This document shows, in pieces, positions 4,573 through 13,068 of a DNA stretch of 64,000 bases. Under the pieces are notes generated by a model. The model made no database searches, was not told where the DNA came from, and worked only from the letters and a program-made list of their open reading frames with translations. The stretch's first letter is position 1, and each line of letters opens with the position of its first letter. This DNA comes from Dimorphilus gyrociliatus (taxonomy: Eukaryota; Animalia; Annelida). The translations under genes and the position numbers were made by a program. The DNA lies in the NCBI GenBank assembly GCA_904063045.1, contig CAJFCJ010000002.1, positions 1,448,422 to 1,512,421 of the forward strand, written 5' to 3'.

Positions 4573-6794
4573 TTAATCTTGATTAGATTCAACTGATTGC
4601 TGGGGCAATTGAAATAAACGCACTCGTTGAGAACAAAAATATAATCTAGAAAAACGAAAAATTAATGTCCAAACGTAAGGTACAAAAAATTCTTCCGGTT
4701 CCTCCTCTTCTACGTAGGCGAACTTTAATTCGGGGAATTTCTAAGTATTTATGGAAATTACAATATATTAATTTTTTAAATACATTTTAAGTAAAATTTA
4801 AAAGTTACCTTTAAATGGTCTTTACGAAATTGAGCTGATCCATCTTCAATGACTTTTAAAACTTGAGGAACACTTAGAGTTTGACCATAACTGCTAGTTG
4901 CTCTTTCGATCTTCGAAAGAAAATATGCCAAAACCGTATCAATATTTTGTATTATATCTTGAAACGTTGGATGAGTCCTCAAAGCAGATAAAGAAGATCT
5001 TTCGTATAACAAAGTATAAACAAGATTTGGGTTCAATTGCATTGCATGACTCAACATTGAATTAATTATTTCTAAGAGCATTCGGAGAACTTCTTCGATC
5101 ACTTGAAGATCATCTACGATATTCTCTTGCTCAGATTCAGGCGTAACCCTTAAACTTTCTACAAGTTTTGTTCGTTTTTTCTGCAGTAAATCGAAAAGGC
5201 TGAGAAGTCTTTGAGAAGCATACGGATGAAGTCGCCTCGTCTGTGATGACATATTAGCCAGAGCAGCCAAGCAATTTGTGTGCAAATACTTGTCGCGCAT
5301 TCGTGTCATATTATATTGGATAGTACGAATTATGACGAGAACCATGAAACTACCTAGAGATATCTCCAATAAAGATCTTTCTTTAAACCAGTTCATCGTT
5401 TTATCAGCTCGTAGTACTATTTCGTGTATCGATTGATTAAATCTATCGTCTTCCGTCAACATTAATAGCACTATTAAAGCCATGTAGACATGATGAGAAT
5501 TAGTATTTGGAGCATCGTATAAAATTCTCAATAAGGGAAGAGTCACTTCTTCAACGGGCAATTCTTGCAAAGTATATTGCTTTATAGTTTTATTTCTATG
5601 TAAAAGTAGATAAAACAATAATGTTGTATGATCCCCATTCGGCCAAATAGTAGAACATAATTCCTTTACAATTGCTGAAACATTCATTTTAAAACTAACG
5701 GGACTCTCCTCTTCTCCTTCCTTACGATTATCCGTAAAACTTATTAAAGCACTTCTATAAGGATTACCAATTAAATTCTCAGTATTTTCTAAATAGATAC
5801 AATGATTCGCAAGAACGAGCAATAATAGCGAACTTTGATTCGCTAATAGTGTATCTTTTACAACCTCTTCGTCTTTATTTTGAGGAGTTTGCCGAAATTT
5901 TAGAGTTACAACATTCCATAAGCCTGAAGCTAACGATGCGGAAACCCTGTATAGAGCTCCGTGATTATCTGAACTTTGAATCATAAATGAGGGGCATTTA
6001 ACTTTTTCAACTATATTATTAAGTAATGTCTTTATGAGCAATGGAGCATGCATAGCACTCTTTCCTTTCATAAGAAAACCATATAATTCAGGAGTCTTCG
6101 AACCAACTGGAATAAACATTTGAAGAGATAGCAAAATGAGAATGCAATTGATACACTCAACCTGTAGGGCATACGTATGCGCTCTGTAAACAAGTAAACA
6201 TAAAAGGAAACATTTTAATTATAAGAGATATAATGTAATTAATTTTAAAAAATTCTTACAGAACAGGAATGTCGATAATTGCTTGAATTAGTGATGAAAA
6301 TAGTATATCAAGGACAAGGTTGCCACTTTCGTCATCGCCAAATTGAGATAAAATTAATTCCTCCGTCAAATTCTCAACGAAATATTTACAAATACTTCGT
6401 AATATAAATAGGGCATTATATGTTTGCCAGAGAAGAACGCTATCAGTATCGACAGACTCTCGTAGCTCGTCTGATCTTCGGTTGAACACACGTATTAGAC
6501 TGTTTACATTTTGGGTTTTACAATTGTTTACTGCCAGCTCCTTACACAACGAGCTGGTTGACTCTTCCAATAAGCGCTGATCGGCTCTGAAAGATTAGGA
6601 TGTTCAGACAATATCTAAGGATGAACAAAGTTCTAGTTTTAAGGCTCTACGAACCGTGTCAGTGGTATATGAAATTTATAGGACAATAGCTGATTCCAAA
6701 AAGGGTCATCAGCAGTAATTTTCTCTACTCCAGACAATTGCAAGAGATATTTATTACTTGACAATTCACTGATACTGCTATACGTAGCTCCCAT
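4573..6794 (-). CDS. DYM: Dymeclin
   Basis: Starts MGATYSSISELSSNKYLLQLSG..DDPFWNQLLS, contains KYLHTNCLAALANMS and NPNLVYTLLY, and ends KFPELKFAYVEEEEPEEFFVPYVW. Four exons with introns at about 6654-6588, 6258-6188 and 4794-4738. Confidence 0.95.
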
Positions 6795-6938
6795 TTGGTA
6801 TTTTTTTAAATTTTCTTTGAAGCTAAAAAATTTTCAACATGAATGAGCTATTCAAGTAAACGTTATTAATCTAGCAATGTGTTATCAATATATCATTCGC
6901 GATAAATTGCACCCATTTCACATTTTATCCAGTCGGCA

Positions 6939-7115
6939 CCAATATCGGAAGTTGTAAAACTGTACACGTTATCGCGCATGCGCGTAACAAAATCCATAGA
7001 AAAAAATTTAAATCCTAAATTTCGACTTGGTAGAATTTTTTACATCTAAAAAATATGAATAAAAATATTTTTCTTTTAATTTTTGCGTTGCTGGGCGACT
7101 TGGTCGCCTAAACAC
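6939..7115. promoter_or_regulatory. Bidirectional promoter between DYM and TEKT2 with CCAAT, ETS, NRF1, X-box-like and forkhead motifs
   Basis: CCAAT 6939-6943, CGGAAGT 6946-6952, palindrome CGCGCATGCGCG 6973-6984, GTTGCTGGGCGAC 7087-7099 and TAAACA 7109-7114, all within the 488 bp between the divergent ATGs. Confidence 0.55.
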
Positions 7116-7282
7116 AACGTGAAAAAAGGGATTTGATTGGTCAATGAGATTTCTAATATCCAATAGAAGTGCTGTATACGAAGTAAAAGTTTGACTAGCA
7201 ACCATTATCAATTTATGAACAGTTCCCTTTTAAAGAGCAAAGTTTGTGGCATAGAATAGAAAATTTTGACTAGAAGGGAATC

Positions 7283-8620
7283 ATGGCAACTTACGTTAAT
7301 TCTGCTGAACGCTATTCAACCTCTGACTGGCACATGAATGGCTATAAGATCTCTACTGATGCCGAAAGAGGTAGAAGCGCTTCCCACGATGTAAGGCAGG
7401 AGGGACGCTTCGTCCGTAACGAAACATCTAATAAAACCAAATGGGATCAACACGACAACAACACCCGTTTAGCAGACAGAGTTGACAATATTCGTAAATG
7501 GAAAGATATTTTGGAAAGAACTGAAAAGGAGTTGAATGATGAAATTGAAGAATTGTCAAGATCAAAACAAATAATGGAGGACGCTTTAGAAGCAATGAAT
7601 CTACCCGAAGAGGTCAACGTAGAAAATTTAACCACAAGAGAGGCAAGACAAGGTGTCGATGTTGTTATGGACGAAGTGGAAGATGAACTGAAGAGGGAGC
7701 AAGAAGTGATTTCTGGAATTAAGAAGCAATTGCAATCAAAGATTGCTCAATCATTTGAACAGTTGTGCGTCCTTCAGGAGGCTAGACAAGAAGTAAGAAA
7801 AGATCTAGAAGACAAATACGTTGCTTTGGGCATAGATGTTGATCAATATAATTTAACTGAGGAGTCGTCTTGTATTTCCTACAAGCCAGATCCATGCCGT
7901 GTACCAAAGGGTTCTGTAACACCTCAGAATTGGGAAGATTACAGCCGATACAATAAAGATAGAGCAGATGCTGAAATAGCTGCTTCCAAACGCCTAAGAG
8001 AATCGAATCATCATACTCTACAACAAACTCAAAATGATTTAAACTCGCAGAAAAAGGCAACTGACTACGCCGTACGTAAAAGAATTCACGAATTTGAACA
8101 AGCTAAAGATGAATTAGAATGGCAAAAGAAACAAACAGAAGATGAAATTGCTGTATTGGAAGATGATATTCGTCGCTTATCAGATGCCATAAGGGCTAAA
8201 ATTAAGCCTATGAAACTAGCTCAGACCAGATTAGAAAATAGAACTGAACGCCCTGGAGTAGAATTGTGCCGTGATAACGTTCAATACGGTCTCTGCGATG
8301 AGGTTGCCCAAATCGACGCTTCAAAGAGAGCATTAGAGGAGAAACTTCGCCAGTCGCAGTACGCAAATATTTAGTTTATAACATATTCATTTAAATTTAT
8401 ACTTTTTTTTTATTTTAGACATGCTTTGCACAATCTTGAAGCAAATTTACATCGTATAAATGAAGATTTGGCTTTGAAACTAAATTCCCTGCGCCTAGAT
8501 AATCAAGTTCTCCAATCCAGAAATCGACTAGGATCTAACCAACTGATACCAGATACCGAAGGCATGCGTAATTTGCACTTGACGGGTATTACCCGTCAAA
8601 AACAACACATTCTTGCTTAA
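7283..8620 (+). CDS. TEKT2: Tektin-2 (tektin B)
   Basis: SDWHMNGYKISTDAE..SHDVRQEGR..ETSNKTKWDQHDNNTRL is a TEKT2-type N-terminus; tektin nonapeptide RPGVELCRD present. Single intron 8359-8418. Confidence 0.93.
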
Positions 8621-9030
8621 ACGACGAATCGTCAGTATTATTTCCACCAATAAATTCTATTTCAATAAAACACTTAACATTTTCAACATATACAATATAC
8701 ATATATATATTAGTATATAAATATATATATATATAAATAAATACGTATTTATAAATAATATATATTTGAATATGCTGTGTATAAACAGTATTTATAAACG
8801 TCTATATAAATATTATAAATAAATACGTATAAAGTATAGTGCGTTAACATAAATTAATCGAAAACGCGCGTAAACGAAAATTATTGCATAACCAATCATA
8901 TCCAACTAGCTTAAACATAAAGTACGCACAATTTTAAAGCAGTGCAACAAAAAACAATGCTAAAATATACAAAGAGATAGAAAAAAAAACAATTTTCCAT
9001 TCGCTCTCCAAAGAAATGTACAGAGTTAAA

Positions 9031-11950
9031 TCAAGCAGCGTTTGAATCGACAATGCGCTCAGTATCTGAACCGTGACAGGTATGAGCTAAAAGGTCTTTT
9101 CTTCTTACGAATCCAACATTACACCTATCGCAAACGTAAGGTTGTTTTTGCCTATGTGCAGACATGATGTGCTCTTGTAAATTCATTTGATAATTGAAAG
9201 TTTTCCCACAATGCTCACAAACGCATCGTTTAACTTTTGACCTTTCGTGAACAGTGGATACGTGGCGTTTAAGATTTTCAGAGTGTTGGAACGATCGTTC
9301 ACAGTATTGACATTTGTGACTCTTTGATACAACGTGAGTTTTTTGATGTTGAATGAAACGATTTTCGGACCAGAAAACTTTGTCACATATGTCACAATTA
9401 AAATCACCCGTTGAACTTTGACGACTACTTTCATCTTTGCTTTCTTCGCCATCCATATCATCTTTTTCATCCGACTTATCTTCTTCATCATCCTTTGGCT
9501 CAATTAGCTCAGGACACATTTCTTCCAACTTGGCCTTGACGTCGTCATATTCTTCGCTTTCCGTATGAATCCTATTCAAGTGTTTATACACATAGCTCCA
9601 ATTCGATAGTCTCAAGTGACACAATGGACAGTGATAAGGAGTAAATCCAGCAGCCACTGGTTTATCGTTTCGGACGTATCGTCGGTTGGTATTTGGCGGT
9701 TGAGATGGTCGATACTCTTCAATATCTTCGTCATCAAGAGCATCAACTGGCATTTCATCGGTGGCTCGGAATTTTTTAACTGGCGGCTCATCGTTATCAT
9801 ATAAATCTTCCTCGCTCACTTCAGTTCGTTCTTCTCCAGCGGCATCAAGTTCTAATTGGTGTTCCTCCCAGTTGCAATTTGGTCGTTTTTTATTTAGGCC
9901 TACATATCGTCTATCTTTTGCGTGCTCTATCTGTAAATGACCATATAACTCGCTAGAATTTTGATATCTAAAGGTACAAAAAGGACAAGAAAATCCGTTT
10001 TCACTAGGTTCTGAGAGTGTAGGTACAGGTACTGGTCGAGACGTGTCTGGTCGTGGATTGACTCTTCTACCAACTAGCGATATTTTCTCTGGTGGTGATG
10101 ATAGAGTATACCTTTTTACACCACCTCGAGTACGAACACCTGCTCCTCTGGTTAATACTCTTCCTCTTCTGGAATTGGAATTTTTTCCATCTTCTGATTC
10201 AAGAAGAGGTCTTTCCTCTTCTTCACTACCCTCTGGGCTTCGCTCTTTTTCTAGATGAGGCATATCTTTTTCATCTCTTTCGAAGTCAGCATAATGCGTA
10301 TTCTTTGCACGCTGCCTTTTACCATAAACGTTTTCTTGCTTTATACGATGAGGAGGAACATATTCATCATCCTCTTCGAATTGTTGGGCAATCTGATTGA
10401 GTTGTGATTTGCGAGCATAGGTCCGCCTCTCTGATCCGCTTGTACGACTTCTTCCACGACCTCGACCGCCAGAAGGAGTGGGAGAAGATTCTTTATCGTT
10501 CTTATTAGGAGATTTTTCTACAATTACTTGCTTGATGTTTAGTTTTCCTCGAATTGCTATATTTCCGCCAATAAATGTCACAGGATCTGTTTGTGTATGT
10601 CTTGTTTTCATTCCATATTCATCGAGTACTTCATCTTCTATCTTATCATTTTTGTCGTCATTAGGATCAACCTGTTCTTGCTCTATATCGATTGTCGGAG
10701 GCTCCAAAGTTTCTTCGACGGGAGGGTCGCACTGTAATTCAGCATCTACCAATTCAACCGATGCTTGAGTTTCTTTCTCTTCAAATTCGAGAGGTACCTA
10801 AAATTTTGTGGGATTGATTGCATATCTCAGATTATGGAGGTACTAAGAAAAAATTTAAATACGTTTATTTGACAATTTCTTACCTCTGTTTCAGCATCTT
10901 TTGTTTCGACGTGGTGTTGAGTTTCATTGTCAATCATATCCGCAACACATTGACATCCATCGTCAGTATTTTCCACTGTGCATTGGGCTTCAGCTGAGGT
11001 AAGATTAGGAGATATTTGTGTTGCTCTGGCTAGCGTGGTCGGGCAGTTTTGAATGCGTACGCTCATTGTCTCAGGTTGATGTTGTACCTAAAATGTTATA
11101 GGCCGAATTTAGAATGTTTTTGACCAAAGTTTACAAGTTTACGTACAGATTTACTATCTATTTCCGGTTTTGCTTCAATTTCGACAGTTGCCGTACCGTA
11201 GAGTGGGTCAAAGCTGGTACTACTGTCAGAGAGGGACGGAGAGAACTGAACGCAAACTGAGGTGACGCTCGCTTCAGCTTGTATACCAAATTCTTTAAGT
11301 TCTGGACTATGTTGAACCTCGGCGGTAACGTATTCTGGGGTTGACTGGATTCCTTCATCTCGAAACTCAGGAATAAAACTTTGTGTGGATGCATCATTTG
11401 TTGTGGGTTTTATTATGTTGGGTACTATGAAATAAAGGGGAAAAAAAGCAATTAGTGATATGATACTTTTTTTTACATATATTGACAAACGCTCCATGGC
11501 GCTGGCTTCATTTAGATATAACGTACACACTTTAGTAAAAAATGAGCCGGTACCTTTGGCGAAATCGATACGATGTTATTTTGCCCATAGAGGGCGTTGT
11601 TTGCAATTCCGACATTTTGATTTGGTTTATAAGCAATTTTTACACAGTATTGAACATTTTAAGCAACAACAAATAATTAACAAATATTAAACCTATGTAC
11701 TTGCCGAAAATCGGCATTAAAAACGAGTTATTTACATATTTTATAACGCCCAAAAAGACGTACCAGATAAGTGCAACTTGATGTCGCTGCCTTCGCTCCT
11801 CTCAACAACGATTGCGCTTAAAAAGTCACGGATTTCTCCATCACTAGCCAAGAGATGATGTTTAAATGCTTTGTTGGGTGTTAAGACATCTTCTTTTAGT
11901 CCTTCCGAGAAATTAAGACTGAAAGTTTTCATGGCGGTGTCTCCAGACAT
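9031..11950 (-). CDS. C2H2 zinc-finger protein (two isolated plus four C-terminal tandem fingers) with an N-terminal tandem 11-13 aa repeat array
   Basis: Exons 10797-9031, 11087-10884 and 11529-11147 join in phase (a possible 42-nt in-frame intron lies near 11425-11466). The 5' exon 11950-11764 (MSGDTAMKTF..) is tentative. Fingers include CPFC..HLQIEH, CPLC..HLNRIH, CDIC..HQKTH, CQYC..HVSTVH, CEHC..HIMSAH and CDRC..HTCH; an AT-hook-like GRGRGR is present. Confidence 0.8.
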
Positions 11951-13068
11951 ATCTGCGTGGTGGAGCGGCTGTCGGGAGAAATGCCGGAGATTTTCAAGAT
12001 GGCGCCAATGAATATGGACAAACCAACAATGAACTTTAAATTTTAATATGTACTCACCTTTCACTCTATTTTTGCCTATAAAGCAATCCGATGTTTGTAA
12101 AACTGCCAGTTATTCGCAATTGTATCGGAAATAGGCAGTTGAAACAAGATAAACAAGCTTCCCGTAGAGGGCGCAACGAATGGCGTCGTTATGTCGCAAG
12201 CGCCACATAGCGGAGGATGTAGCCCTGCCAACACGTGACTTGCCGAGTACCTATTCATTAATATTCATGTTTACAACCGCGAAAAAATAAAAGTGTGCGC
12301 TTTCTGATTCTACAGGTGTATTAGGTGTATTATTAACAATATGGAAGCAATTGTTCGATTGCGCTTGCTTGATGATGAGATCAAAGCATGATTCAAGAAC
12401 TAACACATATGATTAATGAGAAAGTTGAGAAACGGTTCGATTACACATGTGTAATATATTTTTACGAAAAACATAATTTGAAGAAAAATTCGTAGAGACT
12501 CGACCGCTTACAAGCAACCAATTCCTTAATGGCAAGTAAACGAAAAAAAAAAATTTCTTTCATATATATATATATATATATACATATATGTAATATAATA
12601 TATATATAGGTATATATGTACATCCATACATACATAAATATATATATATATATATATATGTCTATATATACATTTACGTATGTATACGTTAAATAAGTAT
12701 ATAGCACAAATTGAAAGGAATAGACACTTGTCAGTCTACACAACGCATAGATTAATAAAATTAAAAAAAATGTACAATTATGTAGCATATCGTTCTCACA
12801 TCAAAATTATGCCTACTAACACACCCACTCACAGAACATTGGCGGTTTAATATATAAATATACAATTCTCTTATATAAATTATGAATTAGTAAATCAGTA
12901 ATAAAGAATCGTATCACAGGCTTAGCAAACAATACATAGGCTTTGAAAAAGAAGAGAAAACACTACAGTACAATATAACATAGGTCGGCTGGGGAAATGC
13001 AGCTTTGCTAGTTGAATGCATCGCAATTATACGCTACGTAATAACGGGATTATATCACCATCTTATTT

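What the first reader, a model, noticed from the sequence alone, without database searches (positions are those of the whole stretch)
10585..11400. Zinc-finger protein with about 16 tandem LC8 (DYNLL)-anchor-like repeats: a possible ASCIZ analogue with reversed architecture
Seen after splicing three exons, units of 11-13 aa: NDASTQS, RDEGIQS, VTAEVQH, KEFGIQA, TSVCVQF, SDSSTSF, GTATVEI, DSKSVQH, MSVRIQN, LARATQI, TSAEAQC, TDDGCQC, IDNETQH, KDAETEV, EEKETQA, VDAELQC, then an isolated KTRHTQTD. The period continues across both splice junctions. Established: LC8 binds TQT/IQx/VQx-type anchors, and ASCIZ/ATMIN is a C2H2 factor whose many sites tune transcription to LC8 level, with its fingers N-terminal. 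Here the array is N-terminal and the fingers C-terminal. Inference: an independently built multivalent LC8-sensing transcription factor. Caveat: several +1 residues (H, N, F) are non-optimal.
Basis: partly seen in the sequence, partly recalled or inferred. Interest (0 to 1): 0.8.

Follow-up and report, generated by a model that had tools for sequence, protein, structure and literature searches.

The report
Zinc-finger protein with LC8-like 11-mer array
A gene found only in the tiny annelid Dimorphilus gyrociliatus and close relatives encodes a zinc-finger protein with one textbook docking site for the hub protein LC8, preceded by 16 strictly spaced, strongly conserved 11-residue units that look like weak LC8 sites; whether those units bind LC8 is unproven.

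Summary
RNA-derived contigs skip exactly the predicted introns. The spliced minus-strand gene encodes about 811 aa.

- **Array:** all 16 listed units are present, with 11 aa between anchors 12 times and 12 aa three times. Gln is the anchor in 13 of 16 units. None of 100,000 shuffles reproduced the periodicity.
- **Canonical site:** KTRHTQTD follows the array, then come C2H2 fingers.
- **Organism and relatives:** the genome is Dimorphilus gyrociliatus. The non-finger part has no homologue outside one close relative, and no known repeat family matches.
- **Selection:** the array is under strong purifying selection (dN/dS about 0.04, with synonymous sites near saturation). Its 8-residue cores are amphipathic beta-strand-like, and no confident fold was predicted.
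- **Fit to LC8 binders:** against 79 published binders, only KTRHTQTD scores like a strong site. The units fit LC8 preferences at -4, -2, -1 and 0, but not at the buried +1 position, which is never Thr.

This is not an ASCIZ relative, and nothing supports LC8 sensing. Uniform 3-4-residue linkers between individually weak sites resemble the cooperative LC8 "rods" of KANK1 and Nup159 more than ASCIZ. My best reading (about 0.37) is an LC8-laddered dimeric zinc-finger factor. Nearly as likely, only the canonical site binds LC8.

The scan also flagged another putative LC8 binder elsewhere in this genome (s1-082000); I did not check it.

The parts
9031..12100 (-). Whole transcribed gene as far as laid: 5'UTR exon, 5'UTR intron, four coding exons, about 811 aa. 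The upstream end is not determined; one RNA contig runs on beyond 12100.
   Evidence: frames, GT..AG; RNA contigs skip 11969-12057, 11425-11763, 11088-11146, 10798-10883
11764..11950 (-). Coding part of exon 1 (residues 1-62 plus one base). Short N-terminal segment with no family match and no confident fold. Unusually low synonymous divergence (dS 0.28).
10717..11401 (-). Array of 16 tandem 11/12-residue units (residues 71-250), interrupted by introns 11088-11146 and 10798-10883. Unit consensus is [T/L]-x-[D/S]-A-[E/S/G]-[T/I/V]-Q-x-S-P-E. Net charge of residues 63-250 is -26.
   Evidence: periodicity, position preferences, beta-type amphipathicity; conservation, dN/dS 0.04; no family, no DNA repeat, no fold
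10585..10608 (-). Canonical LC8-type motif KTRHTQTD (residues 287-294): TQT anchor, +2 Asp, -3 Arg.
   Evidence: score 14.3, 41st percentile of simulated strong binders; rules in PMC6607443
10507..10611 (-). Residues 286-320: the TQT motif plus a hydrophobic beta-prone segment (PVTFIGGNIAIRGKLNIKQVIV). It is 100% identical in the relative although 74% of synonymous sites differ, making it the most constrained stretch of the protein.
10444..10470 (-). GGRGRGRSR, an Arg-Gly-rich basic patch at the start of a basic middle region (residues 300-520, net charge +11).
9922..9987 (-). Isolated C2H2 finger 1 (residues 494-515).
9565..9630 (-). Isolated C2H2 finger 2 (residues 613-634).
9079..9402 (-). 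Four tandem C-terminal C2H2 fingers (residues about 689-796); dN/dS 0.02.

Best explanation
**What is shown.** The gene encodes a C2H2 zinc-finger protein restricted to the dinophilid lineage, presumably DNA-binding. Its N-terminal third is a conserved, very acidic array with no confident predicted fold, made of 16 amphipathic beta-strand 8-mers joined by uniform 3-4-residue Pro-containing linkers. A canonical TQT site follows 47 residues later. The array is under strong purifying selection.

**What is inferred.**
- LC8 (DYNLL) dimers bind the canonical site. I put this at about 0.65.
- From that nucleus, and through the resulting bivalency, further LC8 dimers bind cooperatively to at least several of the individually weak [D/S]-x-[E/S/G]-[T/I/V]-Q units. 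This would zip two chains in parallel and in register into a beads-on-a-string ladder, as in KANK1 L2 and Nup159. I put this at about 0.35-0.4.
- The consequence would be an obligate, LC8-dependent dimer that pairs the two finger arrays.
- Any feedback on the LC8 gene (the ASCIZ idea) is pure speculation.
For: - **Splicing and frame:** confirmed by RNA contigs.
- **Periodicity:** a strict 11/12 period, with 0 of 100,000 shuffles reaching it.
- **Canonical site:** KTRHTQTD scores 14.3 on a matrix built from the 79 binders of PMC6607443. That is the 41st percentile of simulated binders, against a protein-wide mean of -14.7.
- **Array scores:** 15 of the 20 best-scoring 8-mers in the protein are array units in the Q register.
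- **Positions not used to define the units:** these fit LC8 preferences at -4 (p<5e-5), -2 (p=1e-4) and -3 (p=0.016). The N-flank score is the best of all 11 registers.
- **Strand character:** the cores are amphipathic at 160-180 degrees (z 3.3-3.6) and not at 100 degrees (z -0.8). This is what strand insertion into the LC8 groove requires.
- **Composition and fold:** acidic, with no confident fold (pLDDT 43.5), as for the ASCIZ LC8-binding domains (pI about 4).
- **Conservation:** Q0 is unchanged in 16 of 16 units despite 7 silent changes there. dN/dS is 0.10 for the cores and 0.14 for the linkers. Residues 286-320, around the TQT, are invariant.
- **Literature on spacing and weak sites:** a 3-residue linker binds in dASCIZ. 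KANK1 L2 binds at least 15 LC8 dimers through non-canonical anchors (IGC, VNT, VMA, TST, TNT) with 3-4-residue linkers. Its isolated peptides do not bind, and LC8Pred fails on them.
- **Precedent in finger proteins:** LC8 sites are on record in Znf354a, ZFPM1 and ZMYND11.
Against: - The buried +1 position is S, S, H, A, F, F, E, H, N, I, C, C, H, V, A, C. It is never Thr and is no better than random (p=0.64).
- PMC6607443 states that deviations from the anchor give non-binders and that charged or bulky residues there are unfavourable.
- Position -3 is often Ala, which is disfavoured, and +2 shows no fit.
- 12 of the 16 units score at or below the 0.3rd percentile of strong binders.
- The three units with Cys at +1 have A, C or L at -1.
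- The best unit loses its -1 Thr in the relative, becoming ARAAQI.
- The +1 residues and linkers are conserved almost as well as the anchors. This suggests constraints beyond a simple LC8 motif.
- No binding test or multimer model could be run here.
- Even full TQT motifs fail to bind in 32 tested cases.
Confidence: 0.37

Rival explanations
1. LC8 binds only the canonical TQT site, or nowhere. The 11-mer array is an acidic, beta-prone interaction region for a different partner. It could be a repeated docking surface or activation domain for another strand-binding or oligomeric factor, or an intramolecular mask of the basic RG/finger region.
For: - The +1 position does not fit LC8, and most units score far below strong binders.
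- Features outside the LC8 motif are also conserved: P at +3 in 8 of 16 units, E at +4 in 7 of 16, and unit-specific +1 residues kept in 15 of 16.
- The charges are opposed: -26 for residues 63-250 and -12 for residues 251-300, against +11 for residues 300-520.
Against: - No other known motif or family fits.
- A charge mask or a generic acidic activator needs neither a strict 11-residue period nor an invariant Gln.
- The N-flank match to LC8 preferences would have to be coincidence.
Confidence: 0.33
2. The array is not a docking region but a structure of its own. The amphipathic strands, each followed by a turn, would form a beta-meander, solenoid or cross-beta assembly, possibly on dimerisation.
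For: - Strand-like amphipathicity (z 3.3-3.6) with regular Pro-containing turns.
- Purifying selection across cores and linkers alike (dN/dS 0.10 and 0.14), which is more typical of folded repeats than of motif-plus-spacer disorder.
- AF2 drew two long strands, though at low confidence.
Against: - AF2 pLDDT is 43.5 and pTM 0.22, although a single sequence makes this weak evidence.
- Net charge is -26 with few large hydrophobic residues.
- There is no match to any solved repeat protein or Pfam repeat.
- An 11-residue coil is smaller than known unsupported beta-solenoid turns (my own knowledge, not tested).
Confidence: 0.12
3. One reading: an independently evolved ASCIZ analogue that senses free LC8 through its many sites and tunes transcription, for example of the LC8 gene, accordingly.
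For: - A multivalent LC8-like array and DNA-binding fingers sit in one protein.
- The ASCIZ precedent for such feedback exists.
Against: - There is no homology to ASCIZ.
- ASCIZ sensing is attributed to mixed long and short linkers with mostly TQT sites, giving heterogeneous, sub-saturated complexes. Uniform short linkers with weak sites give all-or-none rods instead.
- Target genes are unknown.
- Whether this genome keeps a true ASCIZ could not be examined.
Confidence: 0.06
4. The array is a phospho-regulated cluster, with TQ sites for ATM/ATR-type kinases and S/T-P sites for proline-directed kinases. The Gln and Pro are conserved as kinase determinants.
For: Five TQ (residues 76, 178, 211, 233, 291) and four S/T-P (91, 102, 124, 181) lie in residues 63-300. 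ASCIZ's LC8 domain is also an SQ/TQ cluster (my own knowledge).
Against: - Only 4 of the 13 Gln anchors in the array follow S or T. The rest follow I, V, A, C or L, which cannot be phosphorylated.
- The relative turns one TQ into AQ.
- S/T-P is present in only 4 of 16 units.
Confidence: 0.07

Closest known systems
KANK1 L2 linker-LC8 rods (Walker et al., bioRxiv 2025.07.16.665182; PMC12803091)
   Same: - Many (at least 15) individually weak, non-canonical LC8 sites.
- Short, uniform 3-4-residue linkers.
- Standard motif scoring fails on the sites.
- The region is disordered when free.

The array here has 16 units with 3-4-residue linkers and sub-threshold scores.
   Different: - KANK1 anchors keep a mid-sized residue at +1 (T, C, A) and vary position 0 (N, M, S, G). 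This array does the opposite: it keeps Gln at 0 and varies +1, including H, F and N.
- KANK1 is a cytoskeletal adaptor, not a finger protein.
- KANK1 binding is measured; binding here is only inferred.
- There is no sequence relation.
ASCIZ/ATMIN (ZNF822), LC8-binding transcription factor
   Same: - C2H2 fingers and an acidic, disordered, multivalent LC8-motif region in one chain.
- The tightest ASCIZ spacing (3-residue linker, QT2-QT3) equals the period found here.
   Different: - The domain order is reversed.
- ASCIZ sites are mostly TQT (6 of 7 in fly, 11 in human), against 1 TQT here.
- ASCIZ linkers are mixed (3 to 41 residues); here they are uniform.
- No sequence homology was detected.
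Nup159 DID-Dyn2 (yeast nucleoporin)
   Same: A tandem array of LC8 sites with short 4-5-residue linkers forms a stacked beads-on-a-string rod that dimerises the client.
   Different: - Nup159 has five strong, easily predicted sites; this array has 16 weak ones.
- Nup159 plays a structural role in the nuclear pore.
- It is a fungal protein with no sequence relation.
Single-site LC8 clients among zinc-finger and chromatin proteins (Znf354a, ZFPM1, ZMYND11, Panoramix)
   Same: One canonical TQT-type site in a disordered stretch of a nuclear regulator, used for LC8-driven dimerisation. KTRHTQTD fits this class.
   Different: None of these carries an adjacent periodic array.

Membership tests
Canonical LC8 (DYNLL) recognition motif - applied to KTRHTQTD | 8-residue motif with a T/I/V-Q-T/V anchor at -1, 0, +1 | tested here: met
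   TQT at residues 291-293. Anchor score 11.6, total 14.3, which is the 41st percentile of simulated strong binders.
Canonical LC8 (DYNLL) recognition motif - applied to KTRHTQTD | Favourable flanks: +2 D/E/P, -3 large or basic, -4 polar, no bulky aromatic at -2 | tested here: met
   +2 is D, -3 is R, -4 is T, -2 is H (H occurs in 2 of the 79 binders). Rules, counts.
Canonical LC8 (DYNLL) recognition motif - applied to KTRHTQTD | Lies in an intrinsically disordered stretch | tested here: inconclusive
   The motif is preceded by a very acidic linker (-12 over residues 251-300) and followed by a hydrophobic beta-prone segment.
Canonical LC8 (DYNLL) recognition motif - applied to KTRHTQTD | Physical binding to LC8 | not testable with these tools
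   Needs ITC, pull-down or a multimer model. 32 TQT-type peptides are documented non-binders.
Multivalent LC8 client array (ASCIZ LBD, Nup159 DID, KANK1 L2) - applied to the 16 units | Repeated motifs with Gln (rarely N or M) at 0 and T/I/V/S at -1 | tested here: met
   Q at 0 in 13 of 16 units; T/I/V at -1 in 12 of 16.
Multivalent LC8 client array (ASCIZ LBD, Nup159 DID, KANK1 L2) - applied to the 16 units | Mid-sized H-bonding or hydrophobic residue (T, V, I, C) at the buried +1 position | tested here: not met
   T 0, C 3, I 1, V 1. The rest are S, A, H, F, N and E. This is no better than random (p=0.64). The 79 binders have T 70, V 5, C 2, I 2.
Multivalent LC8 client array (ASCIZ LBD, Nup159 DID, KANK1 L2) - applied to the 16 units | N-terminal flank preferences: -4 D/S, -2 small or polar | tested here: met
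   -4 p<5e-5, -2 p=1e-4, -3 p=0.016. The N-flank is the best of 11 registers.
Multivalent LC8 client array (ASCIZ LBD, Nup159 DID, KANK1 L2) - applied to the 16 units | Short inter-motif linkers compatible with stacked LC8 dimers | tested here: met
   A period of 11/12 equals an 8-residue motif plus 3-4 residues. Linkers of 3-4 residues bind in dASCIZ and KANK1.
Multivalent LC8 client array (ASCIZ LBD, Nup159 DID, KANK1 L2) - applied to the 16 units | Measured LC8:client stoichiometry above 1 | not testable with these tools
   No multimer prediction or wet assay was available.
ASCIZ/ATMIN orthologue | N-terminal C2H2 domain followed by a C-terminal LC8-binding domain | tested here: not met
   The order is reversed: array at residues 71-250, fingers at 494-796. 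The ASCIZ layout is given.
ASCIZ/ATMIN orthologue | Detectable sequence homology to ASCIZ | tested here: not met
   The word search and an exhaustive HMMER search of the non-finger part found only a 90%-identical relative and generic fingers. No direct pairwise comparison with an ASCIZ sequence was possible.
ASCIZ/ATMIN orthologue | Controls transcription of the LC8 gene under LC8 feedback | not testable with these tools
   Needs ChIP, reporter or knock-down experiments.
Known repeat folds (beta-solenoid, 11-mer amphipathic helix repeats such as apolipoprotein, LEA, synuclein) | Profile or structure match, or helical (100 degree) amphipathicity | tested here: not met
   No Pfam match for exon 2 and only a sub-cutoff Cys_rich_CWC hit for exon 3. 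No significant PDB match and none in the Atlas. AF2 pLDDT 43.5. Helical moment z -0.8 against beta z 3.3-3.6.

The most novel reading that the evidence does not exclude
The array is a true 16-17-valent LC8 ladder built from a new anchor class: Gln kept at 0, +1 free to vary, and a uniform 11-residue period. It would have arisen independently in dinophilid annelids inside a zinc-finger transcription factor. That would make it the highest-valency and most regular LC8 client known, the first in which an LC8 rod of roughly 60 nm (inferred from 16 x 11 residues in extended strand) carries a DNA-binding module, and evidence that the +1 Thr rule can be relaxed by cooperativity.
Probability: 0.3. Interest if true: 0.75.

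Novelty: new variant of a known kind. Interest (0 to 1): 0.55.

Why it matters
LC8 is a universal eukaryotic dimerisation hub, and the rules for its weak, multivalent sites are an open problem. The 2019 predictor misses them, and the KANK1 work of 2025-26 showed that cooperative weak sites exist.

This array is a natural, strongly conserved set of 16 variants on one 11-residue template with fixed spacing. Gln is held constant while the supposedly essential +1 residue varies. That makes it a ready-made test of how far cooperativity can relax the motif.

If it binds LC8, it extends the motif grammar and shows LC8 ladders being invented anew in a young transcription factor. If it does not bind, it is a clean example of a conserved periodic disordered (or cryptically folded) domain with an unknown partner, and a warning against reading xQx periodicity as LC8 binding.

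Tried and rejected
- **Pfam:** scanned exon by exon. Apart from one sub-cutoff Cys_rich_CWC hit on exon 3 (16.4 bits, cutoff 24), only C2H2 fingers match, in exon 4; exons 1-2 have no hit.
- **PDB and Atlas:** the PDB sequence search of exons 2 and 3 gave nothing significant. The ESM Atlas look-alike search of exon 2 gave a best score of 0.76, which is meaningless.
- **DNA repeat:** Tandem Repeats Finder found no array.
- **Homologues:** two word searches, one restricted to the non-finger part, and one exhaustive HMMER search found only a 90%-identical relative, apart from generic zinc-finger matches. A metagenome scan found nothing.
- **AF2:** exon 1 (pLDDT 51.6) and exon 2 (43.5) were too poor for a fold search, so none was run.
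- **Amphipathic 11/3-helix repeat idea:** rejected, given helical moment z -0.8 and a Pro in about half of the units (8 of 16).
- **ASCIZ orthology:** rejected on domain order and lack of homology.
- **Rfam:** the conserved 5' region gave only sub-threshold microRNA-like hits in a TA microsatellite.
- Searches went exon by exon, by reference. The joined model was built only inside local scripts for periodicity, scoring and dN/dS.
- **Scoring matrix:** it is my own binder-only matrix, tallied by hand from Table S4 of PMC6607443. It is not LC8Pred itself, and its binder distribution was simulated from the column counts.
Full report
**Gene and splicing.** The finding lies in a minus-strand gene.
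- I placed four coding exons by frame and GT..AG sites: 11950-11764, 11424-11147, 11087-10884 and 10797-9034, with the stop at 9033-9031.
- Contigs from public RNA runs, laid on window 9000-12100, skip exactly 10798-10883, 11088-11146 and 11425-11763. They also skip a 5'UTR intron at 11969-12057.
- This holds for a metatranscriptome (X1), a small transcriptome-like run (X9, 100% identical) and a diverged relative (X2).
- The model is 2436 nt, or 811 aa.
- The joined protein was built only inside local scripts and was never sent to a search or fold tool.

**Organism.** The neighbouring Tektin gene (7283-8371, +) is 100% identical to DgyrCDS1249 of Dimorphilus gyrociliatus. The next best annelid hits are at 74%. 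The window therefore comes from this miniature annelid.

**The observation.**
- Anchor positions are 77, 89, 100, 111, 122, 133, 145, 157, 168, 179, 190, 201, 212, 223, 234 and 245. That gives 12 intervals of 11 residues and 3 of 12.
- Gln is the anchor in 13 of the 16 units.
- The lag-11 autocorrelation of Gln (9) was reached by none of 100,000 shuffles at any lag from 2 to 30.
- The register runs through both phase-0 junctions. The two introns cut the unit at different places, so the repeat did not grow by exon duplication.
- No DNA repeat is left.
- The unit consensus is [T/L]-x-[D/S]-A-[E/S/G]-[T/I/V]-Q-x-S-P-E. Residues 63-250 carry a net charge of -26.

**Relatives and constraint.**
- Word searches with exon 4, once restricted to its non-finger part, found one protein at 90-91% identity (P0001) and otherwise only generic fingers.
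- An exhaustive HMMER search of 1.84 billion representatives with the 455 non-finger residues again found only P0001, plus three weak matches to the isolated fingers. A metagenome scan found nothing.
- The non-finger part is therefore confined to dinophilids, or has diverged beyond recognition elsewhere.
- P0001's contig (L001) carries all four exons with identical exon lengths.
- Between the two species, synonymous sites are near saturation (pS 0.6-0.7). The array nevertheless keeps 85% amino-acid identity, giving dN/dS of about 0.04. The 8-mer cores are at 0.10 and the linkers at 0.14.
- No Q0 position changed, although there were 7 silent changes in those codons. Only 1 of the 16 +1 residues changed.
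- Residues 286-320, which hold the TQT site and a hydrophobic segment, are 100% identical with pS 0.74. That is tighter than the fingers.
- The array is thus a functional, selected sequence and not drifting filler.

**What it is not.**
- No Pfam family reaches its cutoff on exons 1-3; only a weak Cys_rich_CWC hit appears on exon 3. Nothing significant in the PDB and no Atlas look-alike match them.
- AF2 on exon 2 gave pLDDT 43.5 and pTM 0.22. This is consistent with disorder, with the caveat that a single-sequence run is weak evidence.
- The 8-residue cores are amphipathic at strand angles (z 3.3-3.6) and not at the helical angle (z -0.8). The 11-mer amphipathic-helix class is excluded.

**LC8 test: method.**
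- I took the 79 experimentally confirmed 8-mers and 32 non-binders from Table S4 of Jespersen et al. 2019 (PMC6607443).
- I tallied the binder column counts by hand and built a binder-only log-odds matrix.
- This is not LC8Pred itself. The binder score distribution was simulated from the column counts.

**LC8 test: results.**
- KTRHTQTD scores 14.3, the 41st percentile of simulated binders. The protein-wide mean is -14.7 with sd 6.2.
- The best units are LARATQIS (9.3), NDASTQSF (8.2) and VDAELQCD (6.5). The remaining units score 4.5 or less, at or below the 0.3rd percentile.
- Even so, 15 of the 20 best 8-mers in the whole protein are array units in the Q register.
- Taken position by position against the array's own composition, the units match LC8 preferences at -4 (p<5e-5), -2 (p=1e-4), -3 (p=0.016), -1 and 0.
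- They do not match at +1 (p=0.64), +2 or -5.
- The N-flank alone scores best in the Q register out of 11 registers.
- Position +1 is never Thr, whereas the binders have T 70, V 5, C 2, I 2.
- The source paper states that both anchor threonines are buried and that deviations give non-binders.
- The best unit loses its -1 Thr in the relative.

**Which known system it resembles.**
- ASCIZ has N-terminal fingers and a C-terminal domain of mostly TQT sites with mixed linkers. It forms heterogeneous, sub-saturated complexes, and these are held to underlie LC8 sensing.
- A 2025-26 preprint on KANK1 shows a different type. At least 15 non-canonical sites that are individually non-binding, separated by uniform 3-4-residue linkers, bind LC8 with strong cooperativity and form rods. 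LC8Pred does not predict them.
- Nup159 has 4-5-residue linkers and also forms rods.
- The present array has uniform 3-4-residue linkers and sub-threshold sites, so it belongs with the rod-forming type if it binds at all.
- It differs from KANK1 in keeping Gln at 0 and varying +1. KANK1 varies position 0 and keeps a mid-sized residue at +1.

**Verdict.**
- Shown: a real, expressed, correctly spliced, lineage-restricted C2H2 protein with a highly significant, selected 16 x 11-residue beta-prone acidic array and one canonical LC8 motif.
- Inferred: LC8 binds the canonical site (about 0.65), and at least several units join in cooperatively to ladder two chains (about 0.35-0.4).
- Nearly as likely, the array serves another partner (0.33).
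- Less likely: the array folds on its own (0.12), it is a phospho-cluster (0.07), or it is an ASCIZ-like LC8 sensor (0.06).
- It is not an ASCIZ family member.
- The scan also holds an unchecked note of another putative multivalent LC8 binder elsewhere in this genome (s1-082000). I did not test it, and it did not affect my reading.

Noticed in passing
window 11535-12576 (minus-strand 5' region of the gene: upstream, 5'UTR exon, UTR intron, exon 1, most of intron 1): This region is 84-98% identical to the relative's contig L001 (98% at 12427-12576), while introns 2 and 3 and the Tektin-Dymeclin spacer are only 64-71% identical. Exon 1 has dS 0.28 against 0.9-3.2 in the rest of the CDS. One RNA contig (X9, 532 nt) runs about 490 nt beyond 12100. 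The block may be a long conserved 5' leader, an overlapping transcript or dense regulatory DNA. Rfam gave nothing real there.
   Followed up: partly
window 11581-11595 and 12158-12172 (minus strand): The motif GCCCTCTAYGGG occurs twice, once in intron 1 and once in the promoter/5'UTR (0.03 expected by chance). Both copies are kept in the relative L001. From memory it resembles the reverse of a CTCF-type core; this is a lead only and was not tested.
   Followed up: partly
window 8549-8697: A 150-nt block in the convergent 3' spacer between the zinc-finger gene and Tektin is 95% identical to the relative, far above the neutral level. It may be a conserved 3'UTR element.
   Followed up: no
window 10507-10611 (residues 286-320): The segment after the TQT site (PVTFIGGNIAIRGKLNIKQVIV) is invariant between species despite saturated silent sites. 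It may be a self-association strand next to the LC8 site. It was not folded.
   Followed up: partly
window 12560-12690: A TA-rich microsatellite gives several sub-threshold microRNA-family hits in Rfam (best 38 bits against a gathering score of 90). These are composition artefacts.
   Followed up: yes
window 4776-8374 and L001 4078-7620: Gene order zinc-finger gene / Tektin-2 (convergent) / Dymeclin is conserved between the two species. Tektin here reads as one open frame of 363 aa from its ATG, while the annotated protein is 425 aa, so at least one more upstream exon is expected.
   Followed up: no
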